Below, piece after piece: positions 1-64,000 of a DNA stretch of 64,000 bases (position 1 is the first letter of the stretch; the number at the start of each line of letters is the position of its first letter). This DNA is from Auanema rhodensis (taxonomy: Eukaryota > Animalia > Nematoda). The translations under genes were made by a program, and so were the position numbers. The stretch covers positions 10,478,001 through 10,542,000 of the forward strand of contig OZ059898.1 in the NCBI GenBank assembly GCA_964057225.1, read 5' to 3'. Under the pieces are notes generated by a model. It was not told where the DNA came from and searched no databases. It worked only from the letters and a program-made list of their open reading frames with translations.

Positions 1-806
1 TACTTACTTGATTATAATACTTGAAATTCCAGAAACAGTAGAATAAAATAGAGAAAGCGACAAAAACAGTTGAACGATTTGAAGACAATTGTAAGTTTTA
101 GAAAATAATTAAAAATTAGTTCTCTCTACTATTAACTGATTGTCGGCTAAAATATGGTAACAGTTTTTATAAAAAGGTTCTATGATTAGGATTAAACAAA
201 AAAAAGAATCAAAAAGAAACACTTCTTGTTTACTTACTTGATTATAATACTTGAAATTCAAAAAAAAGTAAAAAACAATTGAGAAAGCGACATAAACAGT
301 TGAACGATTTGAAGAGAATTGTAAGTTTTAGAAAAGAATTAAAGTTCAGCTATCTCTACTTTTAACTGATTAACGGCTAAAATAAGGTAACAGTTTTTAT
401 TGAAAATTTCCGTGATTAAGGTTAAACAAAGAAAAAAAAACAAAGAGAAACACTTCTTGTTTACTTATTTGATTATAACACTTGAAATTCCAACAAAAGT
501 AAAGTAAAACTGTTAAAGCGAGTAAAACTGTTGAACGATTTGAAGACAATTGTAAGTTGAAGAAAAAAATTAAAGTTTAGCTCTCTCTACTATTAACTGA
601 ATGTCGGCTGAAATATAGTAACAGTTTTTATTAAAAGTTTCCATGATTAAGATTAAACAAAGAAAAAAAATCAAAAAGAAACACTTCTTGTTTACTTACT
701 TGATTATAATACTTGAAATTGAAAAAAAAGTAAAAAACAATTGAGAAAGCGGGTAAAACTGTTGAACTAAAACAGTCTTTATAAAATATAAATGATATTT
801 TTTTAT

Positions 807-810
807 AAAA
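807..810 (-). terminator. Pol III terminator, T4 allele (ACTTCAC-TTTT downstream of tRNA; representative copy)
   Basis: Run of 4 T on the minus strand starting 8 nt after the discriminator; T4 or longer is the standard metazoan Pol III terminator. Confidence 0.7.
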
Positions 811-817
811 GTGAAGT

Positions 818-888
818 TGCATCGGCCGGGAATCGAACCCGGGTCGCCCGCGTGGCAGGCGAGCATTCTACCACTGAACCACCGATGC
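818..888 (-). tRNA. tRNA-Gly-GCC: tRNA-Gly (GCC), consensus
   Basis: Minus strand GCATCGGTGGTTCAGTGGTAGAATGCTCGCCTGCCACGCGGGCGACCCGGGTTCGATTCCCGGCCGATGCA: 7-bp acceptor stem, D arm, loop CT-GCC-AC, T loop TTCGATT, A73, no CCA. Confidence 0.96.
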
Positions 889-2406
889 TTCGAAAATGTT
901 AGATTGTTTCCGAAAAATTATGAAAAGTCAAGTTCTACTGATTTGAAGAGAATTGTAAGTTTTAGAAAATAATTAAAAATTAGTTCTCTCTACTATTAAC
1001 TGATTGTCGGCTAAAATATGGTAACAGTTTTTATAAAAACACAATAAGGTAACAGTTTTTATTGAAAGTTTCCATGATTAAGATTAAACAAAAAAAAAAG
1101 GATCAAAAAGAAACACTTCTTGTTTACTTACTTGATTATAATACTTGAAATTCCAAAAACAGTAGAATAAAATAGAGAAAGCGACAAAAACAGTTGAACG
1201 ATTTGAAGACAATTGTAAGTTTTAAAAAATAATCAAAAAATAGTTCTCTCTACTATTAACTGATTGTCGGCTAAAATATGGTAACAGTTTTTATTGAAAA
1301 TTTCCGTGATTAAGATTAAACAAAGAGAGAAAAATCAAAGAGAAACACTTCTTGTTTACTTATTTGATTATAACACTTGAAATTCCAACAAAAGTAAAGT
1401 AAAACTGTTAAAGCGAGTAAAACTGTTGAACGATTTGAAGACAATTGTAAGTTTTAAAAAATAATTAAAAAATAGTTCTCTCTACTATTAACTGATTGTC
1501 GGCTAAAATATGGTAACAGTTTTTATTGAAAATTTCCGTGATTAAGATTAAACAAAGAGAGAAAAATCAAAGAGAAACACTTCTTGTTTACTTACTTGAT
1601 TATAATACTTGAAATTCCAGAAACAGTAGAATAAAATAGAGAAAGCGACAAAAACAGTTGAACGATTTGAAGACAATTGTAAGTTTTAGAAAATAATTAA
1701 AAATTAGTTCTCTCTACTATTAACTGATTGTCGGCTAAAATATGGTAACAGTTTTTATAAAAAGGTTCTATGATTAGGATTAAACAAAAAAAAGAATCAA
1801 AAAGAAACACTTCTTCTTTACTTACTTGATTATAATACTTAAAATTCAAAAAAAAGTAAAAAACAATTGAGAAAGCGACATAAACAGTTGAACGATTTAA
1901 AGAGAATTGTAAGTTTTAGAAAAGAATTAAAGTTCAGCTATCTCTACTTTTAACTGATTAACGGCTAAAATAAGGTAACAGTTTTTATTGAAAATTTCCG
2001 TGATTAAGATTAAACAAAGAGAGAAAAATCAAAGAGAAACACTTCTTGTTTACTTATTTGATTATAACACTTGAAATTCCAACAAAAGTAAAGTAAAACT
2101 GTTAAAGCGAGTAAAACTGTTGAACGATTTGAAGACAATTGTAAGTTGAAGAAAAAAATTGAAGTTTAGCTCTCTCTACTATTAACTGAATGTCGGCTAA
2201 AATATAGTAACAGTTTTTATTAAAAGTTTCCATGATTAAGATTAAACAAAGAAAAAAAATCAAAGAGAAACACTTCTTGTTTACTAATTTGATTATAACA
2301 CTTGAAAATCCAACAAAAGTAAAATAAAACTGTGAAAGCGGGTAAAACTGTTGAACTAAAACAGTCTTTATAAAATATAAATGATATTTTTTTATAAAAG
2401 TGAAGT

Positions 2407-2477
2407 TGCATCGGCCGGGAATCGAACCCGGGTCGCCCGCGTGGCAGGCGAGCATTCTACCACTGAACCACCGATGC
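2407..2477 (-). tRNA. tRNA-Gly-GCC: tRNA-Gly (GCC), consensus
   Basis: Identical to 818-888. Confidence 0.95.
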
Positions 2478-3041
2478 TTCTAAAATGTTAGATTGTTTCC
2501 GAAAAATTATGAAAAGTCAAGTTCTACTGATTTGAAGAGAATTGTAAGTTTTAGAAAATAATTAAAAATTAGTTCTCTCTACTATTAACTGATTGTCGGC
2601 TAAAATAAGGTAACAGTTTTTATAAAAAGGTTCCATGATTAGGATTAAACAAAAAAAAAGAATCAAAAAGAAACACTTCTTGTTTACTTACTTGATTATA
2701 ATACTTGAAATTCAAAAAAAAAGTAAAATACAATTGAGAAAGCAACATAAACAGTTGAACGATTTGAAGAGAATTGTAAGTTTTAGAAAAGAATTAAAGT
2801 TCAGCTATCTCTACTTTTAACTGATTAACGGCTAAAATAAGGTAACAGTTTTTATTGAAAGTTTCCATGATTAAGATTAAACAAAGAAAAAAAATCAAAG
2901 AGAAACACTTCTTGTTTACTAATTTGATTATAACACTTGAAATTTCAACAAAAGTAAAATAAAACTGTGAAAGCGGGTAAAACTGTTGAACTAAAACAGT
3001 CTTTATAAAATATAAATGATATTTTTTTATAAAAGTGAAGT

Positions 3042-3112
3042 TGCATCGGCCGGCAATCGAACCCGGGTCGCCCGCGTGGCAGGCGAGCATTCTACCACTG
3101 AACCTCCGATGC
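3042..3112 (-). tRNA. tRNA-Gly-GCC: tRNA-Gly (GCC) variant T8A + C61G (A- and B-box mutant; likely non-functional)
   Basis: Plus strand CCGGCAATCG and GAACCTCCGATGC. Confidence 0.75.
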
Positions 3113-3675: not shown

Positions 3676-3746
3676 TGCATCGGCCGGGAATCGAACCCGG
3701 GTCGCCCGCGTGGCAGGCGAGCATTCTACCACTGAACCACCGATGC
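3676..3746 (-). tRNA. tRNA-Gly-GCC: tRNA-Gly (GCC), consensus
   Basis: Identical to consensus. Confidence 0.95.
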
Positions 3747-5244: not shown

Positions 5245-6022
5245 TTCGAAAATGCTAGATTGTTTCCGAAAAACTATGAAAAGTCAAGTTCTACTGATTT
5301 GAAGAGAATTGTAAGTTTTAGAAAATAATTAAAAATTAGTTCTCTCTACTATTAACTGATTGTCGGCTAAAATATGGTAACAGTTTTTATGAAAAGTTTC
5401 CATGATTAGGATTAAACAAAAAAAAGAATTAAAAAGAAACACTTCTTGTTTACTTACTTGATTATAATACTTGAAATTCAAAAAAAAAGTAAAAAACAAT
5501 TGAGAATGCGACATAAACAGTTGAACGATTTGAAGAGAATTGTAAGTTTTAAAAAAGAATTGAAGTTCAGCTATCTCTACCATTGACTGATTATCGGCTA
5601 AAATAAGGTAACAGTTTTTATTAAAAGTTTCCATGATTAAGATTAAACAAAGAAAAAAAATCAAAGAGAAACACTTCTTGTTTACTTATTTGATTATAAT
5701 GCTTGAAATTCCAAAAACAGTAGAATAAAATAGAGAAAGCGACATAAACAGTTGAACGATTTGAAGAGAATTGTAAGTTTTAGAAAAGAATTAAAGTTCA
5801 GCTATCTCTACTTTTAACTGATTAACGGCTAAAATAAGGTAACAGTTTTTATTGAAAGTTTCCATGATTAAGATTAAACAAAGAAAAAAAATCAAAGAGA
5901 AACACTTCTTGTTTACTAATTTGATTATAACACTTGAAATTTCAACAAAAGTAAAATAAAACTGTGTTGAACTAAAACAGTCTTTATAAAATATAAATGA
6001 TATTTTTTTATAAAAGTGAAGT

Positions 6023-18471: not shown

Positions 18472-20309
18472 TTCGAAAATGCTAGATTGTTTCCGAAAAA
18501 CTATGAAAAGTCAAGTTCTACTGATTTGAAGAGAATTGTAAGTTTTAGAAAATAATTAAAAATTAGTTCTCTCTACTATTAACTGATTGTCGGCTAAAAT
18601 ATGGTAACAGTTTTTATGAAAAGTTTCCATGATTAGGATTAAACAAAAAAAAGAATTAAAAAGAAACACTTCTTGTTTACTTACTTGATTATACTACTTG
18701 AAATACGAAAAAAAGTAAAAAACAATTGAGAAAGCGACATAAACAGTTGAACGATTTGAAGAGAATTGTAAGTTTAAGAAAAGAATTAAAGTTTAGCTTT
18801 GTCTACTATTAACTGATTATCGGCTAAAATAAGGTAACAGTTTTTATTGAAAGTTTCCATGATTAAGATTAAATAAAGAAAAAAATCAAAGAGAAACACT
18901 TCTTGTTTACTTATTTGATTATAATGCTTGAAGTTCCAAAAACAGTAAAATAAAATAGAGAAAGCGACGAAAAAAGTTGAACGATTTGAAGAGAATTGTA
19001 AGTTTTAGAAAAGAATTAAAGTTCACCTATCTCTACCATTGACTGATTATCGGCTAAAATAAGGTAACAGTTTTCATTAAAAGTTTTCATGATTAGGATT
19101 AAAAAAAAAAGTATCAAAAAGAAACACTTCTTGTTTACTTATTTGATTATAATACTTGAAATTAAAAAACAGTAGAATAAAATAGAGAAAGCGACGAAAA
19201 AAGTTGAACAATTTGATGAGAATTGTAAGTTTTAGAAAAGAATTAAAGTTCAGCTATCTCTACTATTAACTGATTATCGGCTAAAATAAGGTAACAGTTT
19301 TTATTAAAAGTTTTCATGATTAGGATTAAACAAAAAAAAGAATCAAAAAGAAACACTTCTTGTTTAATTACTTGATTATAATACTTGAAATTCAAAAAAA
19401 AAGTAAAAAACAATTGAGAAAGCAACATAAACAGTTGAACGATTTGAAGAGAATTGTAAGTTTTAGAAAAGAATTAAAGTTCAGCTATCTCTACTTTTAA
19501 CTGATTAACGGTTAAAATAAGGTAACAGTTTTTATTGAAAGTTTCCATGATTAGGATTAAACAAAAAAAAGAATCAAAAAGAAACACTTCTTGTTTACTT
19601 ACTTGATTATAATACTTGAAATTCGAAAAAAAGTAAAGTAAAACTGTTAAAGCGAGTAAAACTGTTGAACGATTTGAAGACAATTGTAAGTTTTAGAAAA
19701 GAATTAAAGTTCAGCTATCTCTACTATTAACTGATTATCGGCTAAAATAAGGTAACAGTTTTTATTAAAAGTTTCCATGATTAGGATTAAAAAAAAAAAG
19801 AATCAAAAAGAAACACTTCTTGTTTACTTATTTGATTATAATACTTGAAATTCCAAAAACAGTAGAATAAAATAGAGAAAGCGACGAAAAAAGTTGAACA
19901 ATTTGATGAGAATTGTAAGTTTTAGAAAAGAATTAAAGTTCAGCTATCTCTACTATTAACTGATTATCGGCTAAAATAAGGTAACAGTTTTTATTAAAAG
20001 TTTTCATGATTAGGATTAAACAAAAAAAAGAATCAAAAAGAAACACTTCTTGTTTACTTACTTGATTATAATACTTGAAATTCGAAAAAAAGTAAAGTAA
20101 AACTGTTAAAGCGAGTAAAACTGTTGAACGATTTGAAGACAATTGTAAGTTTTAGAAAAGAATTAAAGTTCAGCTATCTCTACTATTAACTGATTATCGG
20201 CTAAAATAAGGTAACAGTTTTTATTAAAAGTTTTCATGATTAGGATTAAACAAAAAAAAGAATCAAAAAGAAACACTTCTTGTTTTTTTATTTGATTATA
20301 ATACTTGAA

Positions 20310-28080: not shown

Positions 28081-28724
28081 AGTTTCCGTGATTAAGATTA
28101 AACAAAGAAAAAAAATCAAAGAGTAACACTTCTTGTTTACTAATTTGATTATAATGCTTGAAATTCCAAAAACAGTAGAATAAAATAGAGAAAGCGACGA
28201 AAAAAATTGAACGATTTGAAGAGAATTGTAAGTTTTAAAAAAGAATTAAAGTTCAGCTATCTCTACCATTGACTGATTATCGGCTAAAATAAGGTAACAG
28301 TTTTTATTGAAAGTTTCCGTGATTAAGATTAAACAAAGTAGAAAAAATCAAAGAGAAACACTTCTTGTTTACTTATTTGATTATAACACTTGAAATTCCA
28401 ACAAAAGTAAAGTAAAACTGTTAAAGCGAGTAAAACTGTTGAACGATTTGAAGACAATTGTAAGTTGAAGAAAAAAATTAAAGTTCAGCTCTCTCTACTA
28501 TTAACTGATTGACTTCTAAAATATGGTAACAGTTTTTATTAAAAGTTTCCATGATTAAAATTAAACAAAGAAAAAAATCAAAGAGAAACACTTCTTGTTT
28601 ACTAATTTGATTATAACACTTGAAAATCCAACAAAAGTAAAATAAAACTGTGAAAGCGGGTAAAACTGTTGAACTAAAACAGTCTTTATAAAATATAAAT
28701 GATATTTTTTTATAAAAGTGAAGT

Positions 28725-46761: not shown

Positions 46762-48479
46762 TTCGAAAATGTTAGATTGTTTCCGAAAAATTATGAAAAG
46801 TCAAGTTCTACTGATTTGAAGAGAATTGTAAGTTTTAGAAAAGAATTAAAGTTCAGCTATCTCTACTATTAACTGATTATCGGCTAAAATAAGGTAACAG
46901 TTTTTATTGAAAGTTTCCATGATTAAGATTAAACAAAGAAAATAAATCAAAGAGAAACACTTCTTGTTTACTTATTTGATTATAATACTTGAAATTCCAA
47001 AAACACTAGAATAAAATTGAGAAAGCGACAAAAACAGTTGAACGATTTGAAGAGAATTGTAAGTATTAGAAAAAAATTAAAGTTTAGCTCTCTCTACTAT
47101 TTAATGATTGTCGGCTAAAATATGGTAACAGTTTTTATTAAAAGTTTCCATGATTAAGATTAAACAAAGAAAAAAAATCAAAGAGAAACACTTCTTGTTT
47201 ACTTATTTGATTATAATACTTGAAATTCCAAAAACAGTAGAATAAAATTGAGAAAGCGACAAAAACAGTTGAACGATTTGAAGAGAATTGTAAGTATTAG
47301 AAAAAAAATAAAGTTTAGCTCTCTCTACTATTTAATGATTGTCGGCTAAAATATGGTAACAGTTTTTATTAAAAGTTTCCATGATTAAGATTAAACAAAG
47401 AAAAAAAATCAAAGAGAAACACTTCTTGTTTACTTATTTGATTATAATACTTGAAATTCCAAAAACAGTAGAATAAAATTGAGAAAGCGACAAAAACAGT
47501 TTAACGATTTGAAGAGAATTGTAAGTATTAGAAAAAAATTAAAGTTTAGCTCTCTCTACTATTTAATGATTGTCGGCTAAAATATGATAACAGTTTTTAT
47601 TAAAAGTTTCCATGATTGAGATTAAACAAAGAAAAAAAATCAAAGAGAAACACTTCTTGTTTTCTAATTTGATTATAACACTTGAAATTCCAACAAAAGT
47701 AAAGTAAAACTATTCAAGCGAGTAAAACTGTTGAACGATTTGAAGACAATTGTAAGTTGAAGAAAAAAATTAAAGTTTAGCTATCTGTACTATTAACTGA
47801 TTATCGGCTAAAATAAGGTAACAGTTTTTATTGAAAGTTTCCATGATTAAGATTAAACAAAGAAAAAAAATCAAAGAGAAACACTTCTTGTTTCCTAATT
47901 TGATTATAACACTTGAAATTCCAACAAAAGTAAAGTAAAACTATTCAAGCGAGCAAGACTGTTGAACGATTTGAAGACAATTGTAAGTTGAAGAAAAAAA
48001 TTAAAGTTTAGCTCTCTCTACTATTAACTGATTGTCGGCTAAAATATGGTAACAGTTTTTATTAAAAGTTTCCATGATTAAGATTAAACAAAGAAAAAAA
48101 ATCAAAGAGAAACACTTCTTGTTTTCTAATTTGATTATAACACTTGAAATTCCAACAAAAGTAAAGTAAAACTATTCAAGCGAGTAAAACTGTTGAACGA
48201 TTTGAAGACAATTGTAAGTATTAGAAAAAAATTAAAGTTTAGCTCTCTCTACTATTTAATGATTGTCGGCTAAAATATGGTAACAGTTTTTATTAAAAGT
48301 TTCCATGATTAAGATTAAACAAAGAAAAAAAATCAAAGAGAAACACTTCTTGTTTACTTATTTGATTATAATACTTGAAATTCCAAAAACAGTAAAGTAA
48401 AACTGTTAAAGCGAGTAAAACTGTTGAACTAAAACAGTCTTTATAAAATATAAATGATATTTTTTTATAAAAATGAAGT

Positions 48480-48550
48480 TGCATCGGCCGGGAATCGAAC
48501 CCGGGTCGCCCGCGTGGCAGGCGAGCATTCTACCACTGAACCACCGATGC
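48480..48550 (-). tRNA. tRNA-Gly-GCC: tRNA-Gly (GCC), consensus
   Basis: Identical to consensus. Confidence 0.95.
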
Positions 48551-50730
48551 TTCGAAAATGTTAGATTGTTTCCGAAAAATTATGAAAAGTCAAGTTCTAC
48601 TGATTTGAAGAGAATTGTAAGTTTTAGAAAAGAATTAAAGTTCAGCTATCTCTACTATTAACTGATTATCGGCTAAAATAAGGTAACAGTTTTTATTGAA
48701 AGTGTCCATGATTAAGATTAAACAAAGAAAAAAAATCAAAGAGAAACACTTCTTGTTTACTTATTTGATTATAATACTTGAAATTCCAAAAACAGTAGAA
48801 TAAAATAGAGAAAGCGACGAAAAAAGTTGAGCGATTTGAAGACAATTGTAAGTTTAAGAAAAAAAATAAAGTTTAGCTCTCTCTACTATTAACTGATTGT
48901 CGGCTAAAATATGGTAACAGTTTTTATTAAAAGTTTCCATGATTAAGATTAAACAAAGAAAAAAAATCAAAGAGAAACACTTCTTGTTTTCTAATTTGAT
49001 TATAACACTTGAAATTCCAACAAAAGTAAAGTAAAACTATTCAAGCGAGTAAAACTGTTGAACGATTTGAAGACAATTGTAAGTTGAAGAAAAAAATTAA
49101 AGTTTAGCTCTCTCTACTATTAACTGATTGTCGGCTAAAATATGGTAACAGTTTTTATTAAAAGTTTCCATGACTAAGATTAAACAAAGAAAAAAAATCA
49201 AAGAGAAACACTTCTTGTTTTCTAATTTGATTATAACAGTTGAAATTCCAACAAAAGTAAAGTAAAACTATTCAAGCGAGCAAGACTGTTGAACGATTTG
49301 AAGACAATTGTAAGTTTTAGAAAAGAATTAAAGTTCACCTATCTCTACTATTAACTGATTATCGGCTAAAATAAGGTAACAGTTTTTATTGAAAGTTTCC
49401 ATGATTAAGATTAAACAAAGAAAAAAAATCAAAGAGAAACACTTCTTGTTTACTTATTTGATTATAATACTTGAAATTCCAAAAACAGTAGAATAAAATA
49501 GAGAAAGCGACGAAAAAAGTTGAGCGATTTGAAGACAATTGTAAGTTGAAGAAAAAAATTAAAGTTTAGCTCTCTCTACTATTAACTGATTGTCGGCTAA
49601 AATATGGTAACAGTTTTTATTAAAAGTTTCCATGACTAAGATTAAACAAAGAAAAAAAATCAAAGAGAAACACTTCTTGTTTTCTAATTTGATTATAACA
49701 GTTGAAATTCCAACAAAAGTAAAGTAAAACTATTCAAGCGAGCAAGACTGTTGAACGATTTGAAGACAATTGTAAGTTTTAGAAAAGAATTAAAGTTCAC
49801 CTATCTCTACTATTAACTGATTATCGGCTAAAATAAGGTAACAGTTTTTATTGAAAGTTTCCATGATTAAGATTAAACAAAGAAAAAAAATCAAAGAGAA
49901 ACACTTCTTGTTTACTTATTTGATTATAATACTTGAAATTCCAAAAACAGTAGAATAAAATAGAGAAAGCGACGAAAAAAGTTGAGCGATTTGAAGACAA
50001 TTGTAAGTTTAAGAAAAAAAATAAAGTTTAGCTCTCTCTACTATTAACTGATTATCGGCTAAAATAAGGTAACAGTTTTTATTGAAAGTTTCCATGATTA
50101 AGATTAAACAAAGAAAAAAAATCAAAGAGAAACACTTCTTGTTTTCTAATTTGATTATAACAGTTGAAATTCCAACAAAAGTAAAGTAAAACTATTCAAG
50201 CGAGCAAGACTGTTGAACGATTTGAAGACAATTGTAAGTTGAAGAAAAGAATTAAAGTTTAGCTCTCTCTACTATTAACTGATTGTCGGCTAAAATATGG
50301 TAACAGTTTTTATTAAAAGTTTCCATGATTAAGATTAAACAAAGAAAAAAAATCAAAGAGAAACACTTCTTGTTTTCTAATTTGATTATAACACTTGAAA
50401 TTCCAACAAAAGTAAAGTAAAACTATTCAAGCGAGTAAAACTGTTGAACGATTTGAAGACAATTGTAAGTTGAAGAAAAAAATTAAAGTTCAGCTATCTG
50501 TACTATTAACTGATTATCGGCTAAAATAAGGTAACAGTTTTTATTGAAAGTTTCCATGATTAAGATTAAACAAAGAAAAAAAATCAAAGAGAAACACTTC
50601 TTGTTTACTTATTTGATTATAATACTTGAAATTCCAACAAAAGTAAAGTAAAACTGTTAAAGCGAGTAAAACTGTTGAACTAAAACAGTCTTTATAAAAT
50701 ATAAATGATATTTTTTTATAAAAATGAAGT

Positions 50731-50801
50731 TGCATCGGCCGGGAATCGAACCCGGGTCGCCCGCGTGGCAGGCGAGCATTCTACCACTGAACCACCGATG
50801 C
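50731..50801 (-). tRNA. tRNA-Gly-GCC: tRNA-Gly (GCC), consensus
   Basis: Identical to consensus. Confidence 0.95.
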
Positions 50802-51364
50802 TTCGAAAATGTTAGATTGTTTCCGAAAAATGATGAAAAGTCAAGTTCTACTGATTTGAAGAGAATTGTAAGTTTTAGAAAAGAATTAAAGTTCAGCTAT
50901 CTCAACTATTAACTGATTATCGGCTAAAATAAGGTAACAGTTTTTATTGAAAGTTTCCATGATTAAGATTAAACAAAGAAAAAAAATCAAAGAGAAACAC
51001 TTCTTGTTTACTTATTTGATTATAATACTTGAAATTCCAAAAACAGTAGAATAAAATAGAGAAAGCGACGAAAAAAGTTGAGCGATTTGAAGACAATTGT
51101 AAGTTTAAGAAAAAAAATAAAGTTTAGCTCTCTCTACTATTAACTGATTGTCAGCTAAAATATGGTAACAGTTTTTATTAAAAGTTTCCATGATTAAGAT
51201 TAAACAAAGAAAAAAAATCAAAGAGAAACACTTCTTGTTTCCTAATTTGATTATAACACTTGAAATTCCAACAAAAGTAAAGTAAAACTGTTAAAGCGAG
51301 TAAAACTGTTGAACTAAAACAGTCTTTATAAAATATAAATGATATTTTTTTATAAAAATGAAGT

Positions 51365-51435
51365 TGCATCGGCCGGGAATCGAACCCGGGTCGCCCGCGT
51401 GGCAGGCGAGCATTCTACCACTGAACCACCGATGC
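51365..51435 (-). tRNA. tRNA-Gly-GCC: tRNA-Gly (GCC), consensus
   Basis: Identical to consensus. Confidence 0.95.
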
Positions 51436-52460
51436 TTCGAAAATGTTAGATTGTTTCCGAAAAATTATGAAAAGTCAAGTTCTACTGATTAGAAGAGAAT
51501 TGTAAGTTTTAGAAAAGAATTAAAGTTCAGCTATCTCTACTATTAACTGATTATCGGCTAAAATAAGGTAACAGTTTTTATTGAAAGTTTCCATGATTAA
51601 GATTAAACAAAGAAAAAAAATCAAAGAGAAACACTTCTTGTTTACTTATTTGATTATAATACTTGAAATTCCAAAAACAGTAGAATAAAATAGAGAAAGC
51701 GACGAAAAAAGTTGAGCGATTTGAAGACAATTGTAAGTTTAAGAAAAAAAATAAAGTTTAGCTCTCTCTACTATTAACTGATTGTCGGCTAAAATATGGT
51801 AACAGTTTTTATTAAAAGTTTCCATGATTAAGATTAAACAAAGAAAAAAAATCAAAGAGAAACACTTCTTGTTTTCTAATTTGATTATAACACTTGAAAT
51901 TCCAACAAAAGTAAAGTAAAACTATTCAAGCGAGTAAAACTGTTGAACGATTTGAAGACAATTGTAAGTTGAAGAAAAAAATTAAAGTTTAGCTCTCTCT
52001 ACTATTAACTGATTGTCGGCTAAAATATGGTAACAGTTTTTATTAAAAGTTTCCATGACTAAGATTAAACAAAGAAAAAAAATCAAAGAGAAACACTTCT
52101 TGTTTTCTAATTTGATTATAACAGTTGAAATTCCAACAAAAGTAAAGTAAAACTATTCAAGCGAGCAAGACTGTTGAACGATTTGAAGACAATTGTAAGT
52201 TGAAGAAAAAAATTAAAGTTTAGCTCTCTCTACTATTAACTGATTGTCGGCTAAAATATGGTAACAGTTTTTATTAAAAGTTTCCATGACTAAGATTAAA
52301 CAAAGAAAAAAAATCAAAGAGAAACACTTCTTGTTTCCTAATTTGATTATAACACTTGAAAATCCAACAAAAGTAAAATAAAACTGTGAAAGCGGGTAAA
52401 ACTGTTGAACTAAAACAGTCTTTATAAAATATAAATGATATTTTTTTAGAAAAGTGAAGT

Positions 52461-52531
52461 TGCATCGGCCGGGAATCGAACCCGGGTCGCCCGCGTGGCA
52501 GGCGAGCATTCTACCACTGAACCACCGATGC
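52461..52531 (-). tRNA. tRNA-Gly-GCC: tRNA-Gly (GCC), consensus
   Basis: Identical to consensus. Confidence 0.95.
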
Positions 52532-54942
52532 TTCGAAAATGTTAGATTGTTTCCGAAAAATTATGAAAAGTCAAGTTCTACTGATTAGAAGAGAATTGTA
52601 AGTTTTAGAAAAGAATTAAAGTTCAGCTATCTCTACTATTAACTGATTATCGGCTAAAATAAGGTAACAGTTTTTATTGAAAGTTTCCATGATTAAGATT
52701 AAACAAAGTAAATAAATCAAAGAGAAACACTTCTTGTTTACTTATTTGATTATAATACTTGAAATTCCAAAAACAGTAGAACAAAATAGAGAAAGCGACG
52801 AAAAAAGTTGAGCGATTTGAAGACAATTGTAAGTTTAAGAAAAAAAATAAAGTTTAGCTCTCTCTACTATTAACTGATTGTCGGCTAAAATATGGTAACA
52901 GTTTTTATTAAAAGTTTCCATGATTAAGATTAAACAAAGAAAAAAAATCAAAGAGAAACACTTCTTGTTTCCTAATTTGATTATAACACTTGAAATTCCA
53001 ACAAAAGTAAAGTAAAACTGTTGAAGCGAGTAAAACTGTTGAACGATTTGAAGACAATTGTAAGTTTTAGAGAACAATTAAACTTTAGCTCTCTCTACTA
53101 TTAACTGATTGTCGGCTAAAATATGGTAACAGTTTTTATTAAAAGTTTCCATGATTAAGATTAAACAAAGAAAAAAAATCAAAGAGAAACACTTCTTGTT
53201 TCCTAATTTGATTATAATACTTGAAATTCCAAAAACAGTAGAATAAAATAGAGAAAGCGACGAAAAAAGTTGAGCGATTTGAAGACAATTGTAAGTTTAA
53301 GAAAAAAAATAAAGTTTAGCTCTCTCTACTATTAACTGATTGTCGGCTAAAATATGGTAACAGTTTTTATTAAAAGTTTCCATGATTAAGATTAAACAAA
53401 GAAAAAAAATCAAAGAGAAACACTTCTTGTTTACTAATTTGATTATAACACTTGAAAATCCAACAAAAGTAAAATAAAACTGTGAAAGCGGGTAAAACTG
53501 TTAAACGATTCGAAGAGAATTGTAAGTTTTAGAAAATAATTAAAAATTAGTTCTCTCTACTATTAACTGATTGTCGGCTAAAATATGGTAACATTTTTTA
53601 TTGAAAGTTTCCATGATTAAGATTAAACAAAGAAAAAAAATCAAAGAGAAACACTTCTTGTTTACTTATTTGATTATAATACTTGAAATTCCAAAAACAG
53701 TAGAATAAAATTGAGAAAGCGACAAAAACAGTTGAACGATTTGAAGAGAATTGTAAGTATTAGAAAAAAAATAAAGTTTAGCTCTCTCTACTATTTAATG
53801 ATTGTCGGCTAAAATATGGTAACAGTTTTTATTAAAAGTTTCCATGATTAAGATTAAACAAAGAAAAAAAATCAAAGAGAAACACTTCTTGTTTACTTAT
53901 TTGATTATAATACTTGAAATTCCAAAAACAGTAGAATAAAATTGAGAAAGCGACAAAAACAGTTTAACGATTTGAAGAGAATTGTAAGTATTAGAAAAAA
54001 ATTAAAGTTTAGCTCTCTCTACTATTTAATGATTGTCGGCTAAAATATGATAACAGTTTTTATTAAAAGTTTCCATGATTGAGATTAAACAAAGAAAAAA
54101 AATCAAAGAGAAACACTTCTTGTTTTCTAATTTGATTATAACACTTGAAATTCCAACAAAAGTAAAGTAAAACTATTCAAGCGAGTAAAACTGTTGAACG
54201 ATTTGAAGACAATTGTAAGTTGAAGAAAAAAATTAAAGTTTAGCTATCTGTACTATTAACTGATTATCGGCTAAAATAAGGTAACAGTTTTTATTGAAAG
54301 TTTCCATGATTAAGATTAAACAAAGAAAAAAAATCAAAGAGAAACACTTCTTGTTTCCTAATTTGATTATAACACTTGAAATTCCAACAAAAGTAAAGTA
54401 AAACTATTCAAGCGAGCAAGACTGTTGAACGATTTGAAGACAATTGTAAGTTGAAGAAAAAAATTAAAGTTTAGCTCTCTCTACTATTAACTGATTGTCG
54501 GCTAAAATATGGTAACAGTTTTTATTAAAAGTTTCCATGATTAAGATTAAACAAAGAAAAAAAATCAAAGAGAAACACTTCTTGTTTTCTAATTTGATTA
54601 TAACACTTGAAATTCCAACAAAAGTAAAGTAAAACTATTCAAGCGAGTAAAACTGTTGAACGATTTGAAGACAATTGTAAGTATTAGAAAAAAATTAAAG
54701 TTTAGCTCTCTCTACTATTTAATGATTGTCGGCTAAAATATGGTAACAGTTTTTATTAAAAGTTTCCATGATTAAGATTAAACAAAGAAAAAAAATCAAA
54801 GAGAAACACTTCTTGTTTACTTATTTGATTATAATACTTGAAATTCCAAAAACAGTAAAGTAAAACTGTTAAAGCGAGTAAAACTGTTGAACTAAAACAG
54901 TCTTTATAAAATATAAATGATATTTTTTTATAAAAATGAAGT

Positions 54943-55013
54943 TGCATCGGCCGGGAATCGAACCCGGGTCGCCCGCGTGGCAGGCGAGCATTCTACCACT
55001 GAACCACCGATGC
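54943..55013 (-). tRNA. tRNA-Gly-GCC: tRNA-Gly (GCC), consensus
   Basis: Identical to consensus. Confidence 0.95.
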
Positions 55014-57193
55014 TTCGAAAATGTTAGATTGTTTCCGAAAAATTATGAAAAGTCAAGTTCTACTGATTTGAAGAGAATTGTAAGTTTTAGAAAAGAATTA
55101 AAGTTCAGCTATCTCTACTATTAACTGATTATCGGCTAAAATAAGGTAACAGTTTTTATTGAAAGTGTCCATGATTAAGATTAAACAAAGAAAAAAAATC
55201 AAAGAGAAACACTTCTTGTTTACTTATTTGATTATAATACTTGAAATTCCAAAAACAGTAGAATAAAATAGAGAAAGCGACGAAAAAAGTTGAGCGATTT
55301 GAAGACAATTGTAAGTTTAAGAAAAAAAATAAAGTTTAGCTCTCTCTACTATTAACTGATTGTCGGCTAAAATATGGTAACAGTTTTTATTAAAAGTTTC
55401 CATGATTAAGATTAAACAAAGAAAAAAAATCAAAGAGAAACACTTCTTGTTTTCTAATTTGATTATAACACTTGAAATTCCAACAAAAGTAAAGTAAAAC
55501 TATTCAAGCGAGTAAAACTGTTGAACGATTTGAAGACAATTGTAAGTTGAAGAAAAAAATTAAAGTTTAGCTCTCTCTACTATTAACTGATTGTCGGCTA
55601 AAATATGGTAACAGTTTTTATTAAAAGTTTCCATGACTAAGATTAAACAAAGAAAAAAAATCAAAGAGAAACACTTCTTGTTTTCTAATTTGATTATAAC
55701 AGTTGAAATTCCAACAAAAGTAAAGTAAAACTATTCAAGCGAGCAAGACTGTTGAACGATTTGAAGACAATTGTAAGTTTTAGAAAAGAATTAAAGTTCA
55801 CCTATCTCTACTATTAACTGATTATCGGCTAAAATAAGGTAACAGTTTTTATTGAAAGTTTCCATGATTAAGATTAAACAAAGAAAAAAAATCAAAGAGA
55901 AACACTTCTTGTTTACTTATTTGATTATAATACTTGAAATTCCAAAAACAGTAGAATAAAATAGAGAAAGCGACGAAAAAAGTTGAGCGATTTGAAGACA
56001 ATTGTAAGTTGAAGAAAAAAATTAAAGTTTAGCTCTCTCTACTATTAACTGATTGTCGGCTAAAATATGGTAACAGTTTTTATTAAAAGTTTCCATGACT
56101 AAGATTAAACAAAGAAAAAAAATCAAAGAGAAACACTTCTTGTTTTCTAATTTGATTATAACAGTTGAAATTCCAACAAAAGTAAAGTAAAACTATTCAA
56201 GCGAGCAAGACTGTTGAACGATTTGAAGACAATTGTAAGTTTTAGAAAAGAATTAAAGTTCACCTATCTCTACTATTAACTGATTATCGGCTAAAATAAG
56301 GTAACAGTTTTTATTGAAAGTTTCCATGATTAAGATTAAACAAAGAAAAAAAATCAAAGAGAAACACTTCTTGTTTACTTATTTGATTATAATACTTGAA
56401 ATTCCAAAAACAGTAGAATAAAATAGAGAAAGCGACGAAAAAAGTTGAGCGATTTGAAGACAATTGTAAGTTTAAGAAAAAAAATAAAGTTTAGCTCTCT
56501 CTACTATTAACTGATTATCGGCTAAAATAAGGTAACAGTTTTTATTGAAAGTTTCCATGATTAAGATTAAACAAAGAAAAAAAATCAAAGAGAAACACTT
56601 CTTGTTTTCTAATTTGATTATAACAGTTGAAATTCCAACAAAAGTAAAGTAAAACTATTCAAGCGAGCAAGACTGTTGAACGATTTGAAGACAATTGTAA
56701 GTTGAAGAAAAGAATTAAAGTTTAGCTCTCTCTACTATTAACTGATTGTCGGCTAAAATATGGTAACAGTTTTTATTAAAAGTTTCCATGATTAAGATTA
56801 AACAAAGAAAAAAAATCAAAGAGAAACACTTCTTGTTTTCTAATTTGATTATAACACTTGAAATTCCAACAAAAGTAAAGTAAAACTATTCAAGCGAGTA
56901 AAACTGTTGAACGATTTGAAGACAATTGTAAGTTGAAGAAAAAAATTAAAGTTCAGCTATCTGTACTATTAACTGATTATCGGCTAAAATAAGGTAACAG
57001 TTTTTATTGAAAGTTTCCATGATTAAGATTAAACAAAGAAAAAAAATCAAAGAGAAACACTTCTTGTTTACTTATTTGATTATAATACTTGAAATTCCAA
57101 CAAAAGTAAAGTAAAACTGTTAAAGCGAGTAAAACTGTTGAACTAAAACAGTCTTTATAAAATATAAATGATATTTTTTTATAAAAATGAAGT

Positions 57194-57264
57194 TGCATCG
57201 GCCGGGAATCGAACCCGGGTCGCCCGCGTGGCAGGCGAGCATTCTACCACTGAACCACCGATGC
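57194..57264 (-). tRNA. tRNA-Gly-GCC: tRNA-Gly (GCC), consensus
   Basis: Identical to consensus. Confidence 0.95.
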
Positions 57265-57827
57265 TTCGAAAATGTTAGATTGTTTCCGAAAAATGATGAA
57301 AAGTCAAGTTCTACTGATTTGAAGAGAATTGTAAGTTTTAGAAAAGAATTAAAGTTCAGCTATCTCAACTATTAACTGATTATCGGCTAAAATAAGGTAA
57401 CAGTTTTTATTGAAAGTTTCCATGATTAAGATTAAACAAAGAAAAAAAATCAAAGAGAAACACTTCTTGTTTACTTATTTGATTATAATACTTGAAATTC
57501 CAAAAACAGTAGAATAAAATAGAGAAAGCGACGAAAAAAGTTGAGCGATTTGAAGACAATTGTAAGTTTAAGAAAAAAAATAAAGTTTAGCTCTCTCTAC
57601 TATTAACTGATTGTCAGCTAAAATATGGTAACAGTTTTTATTAAAAGTTTCCATGATTAAGATTAAACAAAGAAAAAAAATCAAAGAGAAACACTTCTTG
57701 TTTCCTAATTTGATTATAACACTTGAAATTCCAACAAAAGTAAAGTAAAACTGTTAAAGCGAGTAAAACTGTTGAACTAAAACAGTCTTTATAAAATATA
57801 AATGATATTTTTTTATAAAAATGAAGT

Positions 57828-57898
57828 TGCATCGGCCGGGAATCGAACCCGGGTCGCCCGCGTGGCAGGCGAGCATTCTACCACTGAACCACCGATGC
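57828..57898 (-). tRNA. tRNA-Gly-GCC: tRNA-Gly (GCC), consensus
   Basis: Identical to consensus. Confidence 0.95.
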
Positions 57899-58923
57899 TT
57901 CGAAAATGTTAGATTGTTTCCGAAAAATTATGAAAAGTCAAGTTCTACTGATTAGAAGAGAATTGTAAGTTTTAGAAAAGAATTAAAGTTCAGCTATCTC
58001 TACTATTAACTGATTATCGGCTAAAATAAGGTAACAGTTTTTATTGAAAGTTTCCATGATTAAGATTAAACAAAGAAAAAAAATCAAAGAGAAACACTTC
58101 TTGTTTACTTATTTGATTATAATACTTGAAATTCCAAAAACAGTAGAATAAAATAGAGAAAGCGACGAAAAAAGTTGAGCGATTTGAAGACAATTGTAAG
58201 TTTAAGAAAAAAAATAAAGTTTAGCTCTCTCTACTATTAACTGATTGTCGGCTAAAATATGGTAACAGTTTTTATTAAAAGTTTCCATGATTAAGATTAA
58301 ACAAAGAAAAAAAATCAAAGAGAAACACTTCTTGTTTTCTAATTTGATTATAACACTTGAAATTCCAACAAAAGTAAAGTAAAACTATTCAAGCGAGTAA
58401 AACTGTTGAACGATTTGAAGACAATTGTAAGTTGAAGAAAAAAATTAAAGTTTAGCTCTCTCTACTATTAACTGATTGTCGGCTAAAATATGGTAACAGT
58501 TTTTATTAAAAGTTTCCATGACTAAGATTAAACAAAGAAAAAAAATCAAAGAGAAACACTTCTTGTTTTCTAATTTGATTATAACAGTTGAAATTCCAAC
58601 AAAAGTAAAGTAAAACTATTCAAGCGAGCAAGACTGTTGAACGATTTGAAGACAATTGTAAGTTGAAGAAAAAAATTAAAGTTTAGCTCTCTCTACTATT
58701 AACTGATTGTCGGCTAAAATATGGTAACAGTTTTTATTAAAAGTTTCCATGACTAAGATTAAACAAAGAAAAAAAATCAAAGAGAAACACTTCTTGTTTC
58801 CTAATTTGATTATAACACTTGAAAATCCAACAAAAGTAAAATAAAACTGTGAAAGCGGGTAAAACTGTTGAACTAAAACAGTCTTTATAAAATATAAATG
58901 ATATTTTTTTAGAAAAGTGAAGT

Positions 58924-58994
58924 TGCATCGGCCGGGAATCGAACCCGGGTCGCCCGCGTGGCAGGCGAGCATTCTACCACTGAACCACCGATGC
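58924..58994 (-). tRNA. tRNA-Gly-GCC: tRNA-Gly (GCC), consensus
   Basis: Identical to consensus. Confidence 0.95.
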
Positions 58995-61636
58995 TTCGAA
59001 AATGTTAGATTGTTTCCGAAAAATTATGAAAAGTCAAGTTCTACTGATTAGAAGAGAATTGTAAGTTTTAGAAAAGAATTAAAGTTCAGCTATCTCTACT
59101 ATTAACTGATTATCGGCTAAAATAAGGTAACAGTTTTTATTGAAAGTTTCCATGATTAAGATTAAACAAAGTAAATAAATCAAAGAGAAACACTTCTTGT
59201 TTACTTATTTGATTATAATACTTGAAATTCCAAAAACAGTAGAACAAAATAGAGAAAGCGACGAAAAAAGTTGAGCGATTTGAAGACAATTGTAAGTTTA
59301 AGAAAAAAAATAAAGTTTAGCTCTCTCTACTATTAACTGATTGTCGGCTAAAATATGGTAACAGTTTTTATTAAAAGTTTCCATGATTAAGATTAAACAA
59401 AGAAAAAAAATCAAAGAGAAACACTTCTTGTTTCCTAATTTGATTATAACACTTGAAATTCCAACAAAAGTAAAGTAAAACTGTTGAAGCGAGTAAAACT
59501 GTTGAACGATTTGAAGACAATTGTAAGTTTTAGAGAACAATTAAACTTTAGCTCTCTCTACTATTAACTGATTGTCGGCTAAAATATGGTAACAGTTTTT
59601 ATTAAAAGTTTCCATGATTAAGATTAAACAAAGAAAAAAAATCAAAGAGAAACACTTCTTGTTTCCTAATTTGATTATAATACTTGAAATTCCAAAAACA
59701 GTAGAATAAAATAGAGAAAGCGACGAAAAAAGTTGAGCGATTTGAAGACAATTGTAAGTTTAAGAAAAAAAATAAAGTTTAGCTCTCTCTACTATTAACT
59801 GATTGTCGGCTAAAATATGGTAACAGTTTTTATTAAAAGTTTCCATGATTAAGATTAAACAAAGAAAAAAAATCAAAGAGAAACACTTCTTGTTTACTAA
59901 TTTGATTATAACACTTGAAAATCCAACAAAAGTAAAATAAAACTGTGAAAGCGGGTAAAACTGTTAAACGATTCGAAGAGAATTGTAAGTTTTAGAAAAT
60001 AATTAAAAATTAGTTCTCTCTACTATTAACTGATTGTCGGCTAAAATATGGTAACATTTTTTATTGAAAGTTTCCATGATTAAGATTAAACAAAGAAAAA
60101 AAATCAAAGAGAAACACTTCTTGTTTACTTATTTGATTATAATACTTGAAATTCCAAAAACAGTAGAATAAAATTGAGAAAGCGACAAAAACAGTTGAAC
60201 GATTTGAAGAGAATTGTAAGTTTTAGAAAAAAATTAAAAATTAGTTCTCTCTACTATTAACTGATTGTCGGCTAAAATATGGTAACATTTTTTATAAAAA
60301 GTTTCCATGATTAGGATTAAACAAAAAAAAAGAATCAAAAAGAAACACTTCTTGTTTACTTATTTGATTATAAAACTTGAAATTCGAAAAAAAGTAAAAA
60401 ACAATTGAGAAAGCGACATAAACAGTTGAACGATTTGAAGAGAATTGTAAGTTTTAGAAAAGAATTAAAGTTCTGCTATCTGTACTATTAACTGATTATC
60501 GGCTAAAATAAGGTAACAGTTTTTATTGAAAGTTTCCATAATTAAGATTAAACAAAGAAAAAAAATCGAAGAGAAACACTTCTTGTTTACTTATTTGATT
60601 ATAATACTTGAAATTCTAAAAACAGTAGAATAAAATTGAGAAAGCGACAAAAACAGTTGAACGATTTGAAGAGAATTGTAAGTTTTAGAAAATAATTAAA
60701 AATTAGTTCTCTCTACTATTAACTGATTGTCGGCTAAAATATGGTAACATTTTTTATAAAAAGTTTCCATGATTAGGATTAAACAAAAAAAAAGAATCAT
60801 AAAGAAACACTTCTTGTTTACTTATTTGGTTATAAAACTTGAAAATCGAAAAAAAGTAAAGTAAAACTATTCAAGCGAGTAAAACTGTTGAACGATTTGA
60901 AGACAATTGTAAGTTGAAGAAAAGAATTAAAGTTCTGCTATCTGTACTATTAACTGATTATCGGCTAAAATAAGGTAACAGTTTTTATTGAAAGTTTCCA
61001 TAATTAAGATTAAACAAAGAAAAAAAATCGAAGAGAAACACTTCTTGTTTACTTATTTGATTATAATACTTGAAATTCGAAAAAAAGTAAAAAACAATTG
61101 AGAAAGCGACATAAACAGTTGAACGATTTGAAGAGAATTGTAAGTTTTAGAAAAGAATTAAAGTTTAGCTCTCTCTACTATTAACTGATTGTCGGCTAAA
61201 ATATGGTAACAGTTTTTATTAAAAGTTTCCATGATTAAGATTAAACAAAGAAAAATAATCAAAGAGAAACACATCTTGTTTTCTAATTCGATTATAACAG
61301 TTGAAATTCCAACAAAAGTAAAGTAAAACTATTCAAGCGAGTAAGACTGTTGAACGATTTGAAGACAATTGTAAGTTGAAGAAAAAAATTAAAGTTTAGC
61401 TCTCTCTACTATTAACTGATTGTCGGCTAAAATATGGTAACAGTTTTTATTAAAAGTTTCCATGACTAAGATTAAACAAAGAAAAAAAATCAAAGAGAAA
61501 CACTTCTTGTTTCCTAATTTGATTATAACACTTGAAATTCCAACAAAAGTAAAGTAAAACTGTTAAAGCGAGTAAAACTGTTGAACTAAAACAGTCTTTA
61601 TAAAATATAAATGATATTTTTTTATAAAAATGAAGT

Positions 61637-61707
61637 TGCATCGGCCGGGAATCGAACCCGGGTCGCCCGCGTGGCAGGCGAGCATTCTACCACTGAACCA
61701 CCGATGC
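61637..61707 (-). tRNA. tRNA-Gly-GCC: tRNA-Gly (GCC), consensus
   Basis: Identical to consensus. Confidence 0.95.
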
Positions 61708-62039
61708 TTCGAAAATGTTAGATTGTTTCCGAAAAATTATGAAAAGTCAAGTTCTACTGATTTGAAGAGAATTGTAAGTTTTAGAAAAGAATTAAAGGTC
61801 AGCTATCTCTACTATTAACTGATTATCGGCTAAAATATGGTAACAGTTTTTATTAAAAGTTTCCATGATTAAGATTAAACAAAGAAAAAAAATCAAAGAG
61901 AAACACTTCTTGTTTACTAATTTGATTATAACACTTGAAAATCCAACAAAAGTAAAATAAAACTGTGAAAGCGGGTAAAACTGTTGAACTAAAACAGTCT
62001 TTATAAAATATAAATGATATTTTTTTAGAAAAGTGAAGT

Positions 62040-62110
62040 TGCATCGGCCGGGAATCGAACCCGGGTCGCCCGCGTGGCAGGCGAGCATTCTAACACTGAA
62101 CCACCGATGC
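62040..62110 (-). tRNA. tRNA-Gly-GCC: tRNA-Gly (GCC) variant G19T (A-box / D-loop GG)
   Basis: Plus strand CATTCTAACACTG. Confidence 0.82.
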
Positions 62111-63366
62111 TTCGAAAATGTTATATTGTTTCCGAAAAATTATGAAAAGTCAAGTTCTACTGATTTGAAGAGAATTGTAAGTTTTAGAAAAGAATTAAAG
62201 TTCAGCTATCTCTACTATTAACTGATTATCGGCTAAAATAAGGTAACAGTTTTTATTGAAAGTTTCCATGATTAAGATTAAACAAAGAAAAAAAATCAAA
62301 GAGAAACACTTCTTGTTTACTTATTTGATTATAATACTTGAAATTCCAAAAACAGTAGAATAAAATTGAGAAAGCGACAAAAACAGTTGAACGATTTGAA
62401 GAGAATTGTAAGTTTTAGAAAATAATTAAAAATTAGTTCTCTCTACTATTAACTGATTGTCGGCTAAAATATGGTAACATTTTTTATAAAAAGTTTCCAT
62501 GATTAGGATTAAACAAAAAAAAAGAATCAAAAAGAAACACTTCTTGTTTACTTATTTGATTATAATACTTGAAATTCGAAAAAAAGTGAAAAACAATTGA
62601 GAAAGCGACATAAACAGTTGAACGATTTGAAGAGAATTGTAAGTTTTAGAAAAGAATTAAAGTTCAGCTATCTGTACTATTAACTGATTATCGGCTAAAA
62701 TAAGGTAACAGTTTTTATTGAAAGTTTCCATAATTAAGATTAAACAAAGAAAAAAAATCGAAGAGAAACACTTCTTGTTTACTTATTTGATTATAATACT
62801 TGAAATTCTAAAAACAGTAGAATAAAATTGAGAAAGCGACAAAAACAGTTGAACGATTTGAAGAGAATTGTAAGTTTTAGAAAATAATTAAAAATTAGTT
62901 CTCTCTACTATTAACTGATTGTCGGCTAAAATATGGTAACAGTTTTTATTAAAAGTTTCCATGACTAAGATTAAACAAAGAAAAAAAATCAAAGAGAAAC
63001 ACATCTTGTTTTCTAATTCGATTATAACAGTTGAAATTCCAACAAAAGTAAAGTAAAACTATTCAAGCGAGTAAGACTGTTGAACGATTTGAAGAGAATT
63101 GTAAGTATTAGAAAAAAATTAAAGTTTAGCTCTCTCTACTATTTAATGATTGTCGGCTAAAATATGGTAACAGTTTTTATTAAAAGTTTCCATGACTAAG
63201 ATTAAACAAAGAAAAAAAATCAAAGAGAAACACTTCTTGTTTCCTAATTTGATTATAACACTTGAAATTCCAACAAAAGTAAAGTAAAACTGTTAAAGCG
63301 AGTAAAACTGTTGAACTAAAACAGTCTTTATAAAATATAAATGATATTTTTTTATAAAAATGAAGT

Positions 63367-63437
63367 TGCATCGGCCGGGAATCGAACCCGGGTCGCCCGC
63401 GTGGCAGGCGAGCATTCTACCACTGAACCACCGATGC
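63367..63437 (-). tRNA. tRNA-Gly-GCC: tRNA-Gly (GCC), consensus
   Basis: Identical to consensus. Confidence 0.95.
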
Positions 63438-63769
63438 TTCGAAAATGTTAGATTGTTTCCGAAAAATTATGAAAAGTCAAGTTCTACTGATTTGAAGAGA
63501 ATTGTAAGTTTTAGAAAAGAATTAAAGGTCAGCTATCTCTACTATTAACTGATTATCGGCTAAAATATGGTAACAGTTTTTATTAAAAGTTTCCATGATT
63601 AAGATTAAACAAAGAAAAAAAATCAAAGAGAAACACTTCTTGTTTACTAATTTGATTATAACACTTGAAAATCCAACAAAAGTAAAATAAAACTGTGAAA
63701 GCGGGTAAAACTGTTGAACTAAAACAGTCTTTATAAAATATAAATGATATTTTTTTAGAAAAGTGAAGT

Positions 63770-63840
63770 TGCATCGGCCGGGAATCGAACCCGGGTCGCC
63801 CGCGTGGCAGGCGAGCATTCTAACACTGAACCACCGATGC
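63770..63840 (-). tRNA. tRNA-Gly-GCC: tRNA-Gly (GCC) variant G19T
   Basis: CATTCTAACACTG. Confidence 0.82.
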
Positions 63841-64000
63841 TTCGAAAATGTTATATTGTTTCCGAAAAATTATGAAAAGTCAAGTTCTACTGATTTGAAG
63901 AGAATTGTAAGTTTTAGAAAAGAATTAAAGTTCAGCTATCTCTACTATTAACTGATTATCGGCTAAAATAAGGTAACAGTTTTTATTGAAAGTTTCCATG

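What the first reader, a model, noticed from the sequence alone, without database searches (positions are those of the whole stretch)
1..64000. Satellite-borne tRNA gene amplification: an optional 172-bp tRNA-Gly(GCC) cassette at one fixed site of a 231-bp satellite
Seen: 50 tRNA-Gly(GCC) copies, 30 of them identical, all on one strand. Each lies in the same 172-bp block interrupting the monomer at GTTGAAC^GATTTGAAG; about 4 of 5 monomers are empty. Known: tandem tRNA arrays exist (e.g. Entamoeba tRNA-STR arrays, vertebrate tandem tRNA clusters), but there the tRNA is normally an obligate part of every repeat unit. Inference: here a complete minimal Pol III unit was captured once by a pre-existing satellite and now hitchhikes on satellite turnover, so tRNA-Gly dosage is set by the filled:empty ratio. 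It could be a dosage device, a Pol III/TFIIIC-based chromatin-barrier lattice within heterochromatin, or neutral hitchhiking.
Basis: partly seen in the sequence, partly recalled or inferred. Interest (0 to 1): 0.85.

Follow-up and report, generated by a model that had tools for sequence, protein, structure and literature searches.

The report
Glycine-tRNA genes interspersed in worm satellite
In a long repeat block of what is probably a roundworm's germline-only DNA, one unit in five carries a complete glycine-tRNA gene that spreads with the repeat rather than jumping, and its mutation pattern hints that the genes are in use; tRNA arrays in this genome were already reported in outline.

Summary
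Observation confirmed. There are 50 co-oriented 172-bp blocks, each a tRNA-Gly(GCC) gene with 51 bp upstream and 50 bp downstream. All sit at one junction of a 231-bp satellite; 21% of units are filled and 30 genes are identical.

The block is not mobile. It occurs behind one monomer subfamily only (50/50; 0 of 136 other ends), has no target duplication, and is copied inside multi-unit duplications.

Capture is not shown. A tRNA-gene array (403-bp unit) that lost the gene and is eroding into satellite fits slightly better (about 55:38). A near-precise loss is visible in the window; a gain into a new subfamily is not.

19 of 50 genes are probably dead. Six of 7 point mutations hit invariant A/B-box bases while stems are spared (post hoc p about 0.005), which suggests Pol III use rather than inert hitchhiking.

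Scan notes, unverified here, place this in Auanema rhodense, where a 2026 preprint reports tRNA arrays in eliminated DNA. The scan found this same array before on neighbouring DNA, and a similar tRNA-Arg array elsewhere.

The parts
1..64000 (.). Mixed tandem array: 231-bp AT-rich monomer (24% GC, mean pairwise difference 9.8%); 239 whole units, 50 followed by the tRNA block; runs off both window ends
76..305 (+). Example empty monomer (starts GATTTGAAG, ends GTTGAAC)
768..939 (-). First 172-bp block (modal sequence). The other 49 start at 2357, 2992, 3626, 4490, 5124, 5973, 7985, 10466, 11099, 11964, 12597, 13229, 13863, 15187, 18351, 28675, 29557, 30208, 31073, 31938, 32803, 33434, 34068, 34702, 35333, 35967, 36601, 37927, 38559, 39654, 42365, 43015, 43880, 44745, 45376, 46010, 46641, 48430, 50681, 51315, 52411, 54893, 57144, 57778, 58874, 61587, 61990, 63317, 63720
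818..888 (-). tRNA-Gly(GCC) gene, 71 nt, no intron, no encoded CCA; acceptor, D and T stems form in the predicted fold
871..881 (-). A box (gene nt 8-18)
   Evidence: box positions from established tRNA promoter knowledge
829..839 (-). B box (gene nt 50-60)
889..939 (-). 51-bp upstream flank; long enough to hold the TFIIIB site, which lies about 40 bp upstream in yeast; mostly not transcribed
   Evidence: function inferred
807..810 (-). T4 run 7 nt after the gene, the probable Pol III terminator; T5 in about half of the copies through one C-to-T change
   Evidence: function inferred
768..817 (-). 50-bp downstream flank; all 5 variants lie in the 13 nt next to the gene, and the outer 37 bp are invariant
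18523..28674 (.). Longest gene-free run, 44 monomers
53455..53560 (.). Empty junction with the block-linked haplotype on both sides. It differs from filled junctions at only 2 of 120 bp, at -4 and +5 from the junction: probable secondary loss of the block. Duplicated at 59918-60023
47275..59970 (.). 6,463-bp tandem duplication: 25 monomers and 4 blocks with no monomer difference in the aligned columns (end coordinate approximate)
61587..62161 (.). The only adjacent filled-filled context (403-bp spacing), repeated at 63317-63891; the monomer between looks like a recombinant of known halves

Best explanation
This is one tandem array whose units exist in two allelic forms, with or without a 172-bp complete tRNA-Gly(GCC) gene. 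SHOWN: the difference arose once, is linked to one monomer-end subfamily, and spreads by block duplication and unequal exchange, not by transposition. INFERRED, direction (about 55%): the ancestor was a 403-bp tRNA-gene array. One end-joining deletion removed the gene with its flanks, the empty 231-bp unit spread to about 80%, and further precise losses occur by conversion from empty neighbours. INFERRED, function (about 55-60%): the intact copies are bound and transcribed by Pol III in the germline. Copies that lose their promoter are tolerated, while changes that would give a faulty but still transcribed tRNA are scarce. The array would then be a loose, redundant germline tRNA supply, not a tuned dosage switch.
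For: Not mobile: 50/50 blocks follow T-type monomer ends and 0 of 136 A-type ends; there is no target duplication; block and flank haplotypes co-vary. Losses occur: the scarred empty junction differs from filled ones only at -4 and +5. The F1 flank haplotype occurs in 26 filled units and otherwise only in that scarred pair. The deepest split of the junction tree separates an all-empty clade from the clade holding all filled units, support 98/100, midpoint root only. Short similarities join the block's ends to the adjacent monomer end: 8/9 match, p=0.005; 6/8 match, p=0.02; both post hoc. The block contains non-transcribed upstream DNA and no tail, so retroposition is excluded. 172 bp lies in the 50-200 bp deletion class of polymerase-theta end joining in C. 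elegans (PMC4032859), and an inverted templated insert of the kind typical of that pathway is present in this array. The preprint reports 19,554 tRNA loci and tandem tRNA arrays in eliminated DNA (10.64898/2026.08.27.747507). Constraint: 6 of 7 point mutations fall in the A/B boxes, p=0.003-0.013; there is 1 point event outside the boxes against 8.7 expected from the flank rate, p=0.002 (0.026 counting the complex allele as two more). Trailer variants cluster next to the gene, p about 0.002, as described for active tRNA genes (PMC6130373).
Against: Empty junctions are more diverse than filled ones (left-flank difference 0.18 against 0.05), and empty units occur in both deep clades, so deletion needs at least two further precise losses. 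There is no exact microhomology at the junction, and no remnant of the block in empty units. Adjacent filled units are rare (2 against 10.3 expected), which mildly favours insertion in a toy simulation (1.5- to 3-fold). The mutation-spectrum tests rest on 7-9 events and were chosen after seeing the data. Selection on one copy among hundreds should be very weak. The 5' flank shows no clear enrichment of variants near the gene. Species, germline restriction and expression were not tested.
Confidence: 0.5

Rival explanations
1. Capture: a 172-bp DNA fragment with a whole tRNA gene was inserted once, by templated break repair, into a T-type junction of an older satellite, then rose to about 20% by turnover.
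For: All filled units fall in one clade that also holds empty units with identical ends. Empties are more diverse; block diversity is 1-2% against 9.8% for monomers. Filled neighbours are rare. A neutral variant reaches 20% more often than 80%. Precedent: pBuM alpha against alpha/beta repeats in Drosophila (PMC5555486).
Against: No target duplication and no parent locus known. It needs loss of the empty F1 allele and a flank exchange within 15 bp of the junction. Filled units are rejected as one clade (p-AU 0.019). Lower diversity of the rarer class is also expected from its frequency alone (0.27 observed, 0.21/0.79 = 0.27; inference). Long templated insertions from distant loci are rarer than 50-200 bp deletions in nematodes (own knowledge, partly).
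Confidence: 0.38
2. Inert hitchhiking: whatever the direction, the genes are silent in heterochromatin and evolve neutrally, like clustered tRNA genes in Arabidopsis.
For: 38% of copies are dead and get duplicated like the rest. The total number of mutation events in the gene is not below the flank rate (p=0.47-0.75). Clustered tRNA genes can be silent (PMC7544208). The preprint argues that eliminated regions are places of weak selection.
Against: Mutations fall on box bases and avoid stems. All six variants present in 5 or more copies lie in the flanks. The modal gene is intact.
Confidence: 0.35
3. The block is a mobile or homing element that inserts at a preferred satellite site.
For: Fixed site; two filled flank haplotypes share nearly the same block.
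Against: Zero of 136 A-type ends are filled. No terminal repeats, target duplication, tail or coding capacity. One orientation only. Block phylogeny follows the flanks.
Confidence: 0.03
4. A TFIIIC chromatin-barrier lattice selected for regular spacing within heterochromatin.
For: tRNA genes act as barriers in yeast (own knowledge); adjacent filled units are under-represented.
Against: Spacing is irregular, 1-44 monomers, including a 10-kb gap. B-box and A-box mutants, which should lose barrier activity, are the commonest tolerated class.
Confidence: 0.05

Closest known systems
Tandem tRNA arrays in the eliminated (germline-restricted) DNA of Auanema rhodense (bioRxiv 10.64898/2026.08.27.747507)
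   Same: Probably the same genome (scan notes; not verified here). The preprint gives repeat units of 167-504 bp, tRNA arrays in eliminated DNA, and ncRNA density under 20% per 10 kb; here it is 5.5%.
   Different: The main text does not mention a 231-bp unit, filled and empty forms, or mutation patterns. Its tables S3 and S4 could not be read. None of its four FISH probes matches this window.
pBuM-1 (alpha, 190 bp) and pBuM-2 (alpha/beta, 370 bp) satellites of the Drosophila buzzatii cluster (PMC5555486)
   Same: One satellite family with and without a fixed extra block of about 180 bp.
   Different: The beta block is of unknown origin, not a gene; its direction (insertion) is supported by an outgroup species; the two forms mostly dominate in different species.
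Satellites derived from RNA-gene repeats, e.g. PcP190 related to 5S rDNA in frogs (PMC11675491)
   Same: A link between a Pol III gene array and a satellite.
   Different: PcP190 keeps the gene-like part; here the empty unit would be the spacer with the whole gene removed.
Clustered tRNA genes of Arabidopsis (PMC7544208); Entamoeba tRNA-STR arrays and Xenopus oocyte-type tRNA clusters (the last two from own knowledge)
   Same: Co-oriented tandem tRNA genes.
   Different: In those arrays the gene is part of every unit; the Arabidopsis clusters are silenced by DNA methylation.

Membership tests
Eukaryotic tRNA gene (Pol III type 2) | Cloverleaf with anticodon | tested here: met
   ARAGORN; Rfam 66.6 bits; fold
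Eukaryotic tRNA gene (Pol III type 2) | Intact A and B boxes and a downstream T run | tested here: met
   Met in 31 of 50 copies; T4 or T5 run in all
Eukaryotic tRNA gene (Pol III type 2) | Transcribed | not testable with these tools
Satellite DNA | Long head-to-tail array of a non-coding monomer with higher-order duplications | tested here: met
   no Rfam family in the monomer
Tandem tRNA-gene array (obligate gene in each unit) | Gene in every unit | tested here: not met
   21% of units filled
tRNA-derived SINE or retroposed tRNA copy | Starts near the transcript 5' end, has a tail or CCA and a target duplication | tested here: not met
   51 bp of upstream DNA, no CCA, no tail, no target duplication
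Site-specific mobile element (MITE or homing cassette) | Independent insertions across target haplotypes; terminal repeats | tested here: not met
   0 of 136 A-type ends filled; Mantel r=0.43
Composite satellite born by insertion (pBuM-2 type) | Empty form ancestral, shown by outgroup or root | tested here: inconclusive
   No root available
Auanema rhodense germline-restricted repeat block | Species identity and low somatic read coverage | not testable with these tools

The most novel reading that the evidence does not exclude
Pol III-occupied units stall replication forks and break. Broken units are repaired from neighbours, so alleles that cannot load Pol III (empty or box-dead) act as donors and spread. 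This is a conversion drive like the recombination-hotspot paradox, and it would turn tRNA-gene arrays into satellite DNA. Selection for germline tRNA supply would hold the filled fraction near one in five to seven. It would explain the excess of box mutants, the scarred precise loss, and the similar ratio noted by the scan for a tRNA-Arg array. In yeast a B-box mutation removes fork pausing (10.1101/2020.01.29.925644); the drive itself is not shown here.
Probability: 0.15. Interest if true: 0.78.

Novelty: new variant of a known kind. Interest (0 to 1): 0.45.

Why it matters
The array holds both states of a gene-array-to-satellite transition side by side, with linked SNPs, so the origin of a satellite can be tested with a sister-species assembly. 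If the box-biased mutation pattern holds over the whole array, it offers a sequence-only sign that germline-restricted tRNA genes are active. That bears on the open question of whether DNA eliminated from the soma is only a refuge for repeats or also a germline RNA supply.

Tried and rejected

Exact-pattern scans of metagenome contigs for the block's leader and for the monomer found nothing, which is uninformative for a nematode germline repeat. The preprint's FISH probes and the telomere hexamer do not occur in the window. Rfam found nothing credible in the monomer.

The idea that the block's flanks are degenerate monomer was not supported by a global shuffle test. Diversity ratios were rejected as proof of capture because class frequency predicts the same ratio. 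Rarity of adjacent filled units was simulated under both directions and discriminates poorly. A simple count of mutations in gene against flanks shows no selection; only their positions do. Paper searches found no report of filled and empty tRNA satellites.
Full report
Observation. The window is one tandem array. Splitting it at the monomer start gives 239 whole units of about 231 bp, 50 of which are followed by a 172-bp block. BLAST finds exactly 50 blocks, all in one orientation and all at the junction GTTGAAC / GATTTGAAG. Each holds a 71-nt tRNA-Gly(GCC) gene on the minus strand, 51 bp upstream and 50 bp downstream, with a T4 or T5 run 7 nt after the gene. Thirty genes are identical.

The block is not mobile. 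Monomer ends fall into an A-type clade and a T-type clade that differ by 24-33% over the last 43 bp. All 50 blocks follow T-type ends and none of 136 A-type ends is filled. There is no target duplication or terminal repeat. The block includes DNA that Pol III does not transcribe and lacks CCA or a tail, so it is not a retroposed copy. Block haplotypes follow flank haplotypes (Mantel r=0.43, p=0.0002), and large duplications carry blocks along, for example 6,463 bp with 25 monomers and 4 blocks. Spacing is 1 to 44 monomers, most often 2.

Direction is not settled. For capture: empty junctions are more diverse than filled ones (0.18 against 0.05 in the last 25 bp); filled units share ends with some empties; blocks differ by 1-2% while monomers differ by 9.8%; and adjacent filled units are rare (2 against 10.3). 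These signs are weaker than they look. The diversity ratio equals the frequency ratio of the two classes, which long coexistence would also give (inference). A toy simulation separates the two directions only 1.5- to 3-fold on adjacency. Filled units are not one clade (p-AU 0.019), so either history needs later exchanges.

For deletion from a 403-bp tRNA array: a near-precise loss is visible at 53455-53560 and its duplicate, where an empty junction matches filled ones at 118 of 120 bp and the two differences flank the junction. No gain into an A-type end is seen. The F1 flank haplotype is otherwise private to filled units. The midpoint of the junction tree separates an all-empty clade from the clade with all filled units (no true root). 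The block's ends resemble the neighbouring monomer end over 8-9 bp (post hoc). Deletions of 50-200 bp are a typical product of polymerase-theta end joining in C. elegans (PMC4032859), and a templated inverted insert typical of that pathway occurs in three monomers here. I put deletion at about 55% and capture at about 38%.

Function. Twenty genes differ from the modal sequence and 19 of them carry a hit on an invariant base or a deletion, so single copies are dispensable. The number of mutation events in the gene is not below the flank rate, but their positions are biased. Six of 7 point events hit U8, G19, U55, A58 and C61 (twice, independently), all invariant A/B-box bases: p=0.003-0.005 for the boxes, or 0.009-0.013 after removing one event on an already mutant copy. 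Outside the boxes there is one point event and one complex anticodon-removing allele against 8.7 expected. All five trailer variants lie within 13 nt of the gene's 3' end (p about 0.002), and C-to-T changes on the coding strand outnumber the reverse 4 to 0 (p=0.07). Active tRNA genes show raised mutation in the inner flanks and purged gene bodies (PMC6130373; PMC13010820). In Caenorhabditis, stem sites are the more polymorphic ones, the opposite of what is seen here. The simplest reading is that promoter-dead copies are harmless while transcribed faulty copies are scarce, which implies Pol III use. The tests are post hoc and rest on few events, so I give activity about 55-60%. A first-stage note on this same window saw the box bias too (s1-393718); it is not independent evidence.

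Context. They report the same array 680-804 kb before this window and in the next window. They also report pure tRNA arrays for Ala, Asp, Phe and Val, and a tRNA-Arg array with filled 607-bp and empty 410-bp units read as a deletion. The preprint 10.64898/2026.08.27.747507 reports elimination of 61% of the genome from the soma, 19,554 tRNA loci, repeat units of 167-504 bp, and tRNA arrays in eliminated DNA. The window lies at least 9.6 Mb from one end and 11 Mb from the other end of its piece. That fits a central repeat block, which on autosomes is eliminated; this is inference. If so, any tRNA output would be limited to the germline and earliest embryo.

Comparison and verdict. A satellite with an optional fixed block is known (pBuM, PMC5555486), satellites related to Pol III gene arrays are known (PcP190, PMC11675491), and tRNA arrays in this genome are published in outline. 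I found no paper describing a filled-and-empty tRNA satellite, but the scan has already noted this array. It is a new variant of a known kind. The most novel open reading is a conversion drive against Pol III-loaded units balanced by dosage selection; a B-box mutation removes fork pausing in yeast, but the drive is not shown (about 15%). Overall interest 0.45.

Noticed in passing
window 28969-29000, 29851-29882, 42659-42690: A 32-bp inverted copy of the T-type monomer end is inserted in three related monomers; it is a perfect complement of 29258-29289. It looks like a templated repair insert. Each of these monomers directly follows a block with the 10-bp tRNA deletion.
   Followed up: partly
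window 32853-32920, 34752-34819, 44795-44862: A tRNA allele with the anticodon deleted plus two nearby substitutions, probably one complex event; the promoter boxes are intact and the cloverleaf is lost in the predicted fold.
   Followed up: partly
block position 44, e.g. window 30251: A C-to-T change 7 nt after the gene lengthens the probable terminator from T4 to T5 in 25 of 50 copies and marks the second filled lineage.
   Followed up: partly
monomer columns 200-224 of T-type ends plus the block start: Three near-copies of the 9-mer TAAAAC(T/A)GT at 18-bp and 14-bp spacing span the left junction; the last two half-sites could form a small hairpin.
   Followed up: partly
window about 1030-1070 and 5950-5972: A local duplication of about 29 bp in one monomer, and a 16-bp deletion ending 8 bp before a block in another.
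   Followed up: no
modal gene nt 45, window 844: The variable loop has A where animal tRNA-Gly(GCC) usually has G (from memory, untested). If the somatic genes have G, this base would let array transcripts be told apart in RNA data.
   Followed up: no
whole window: Monomer column 11 is G after all 49 scored blocks but C after 46 of 53 empty T-type ends, and one right-hand haplotype (R-GT) follows 74 empty junctions and no block.
   Followed up: yes
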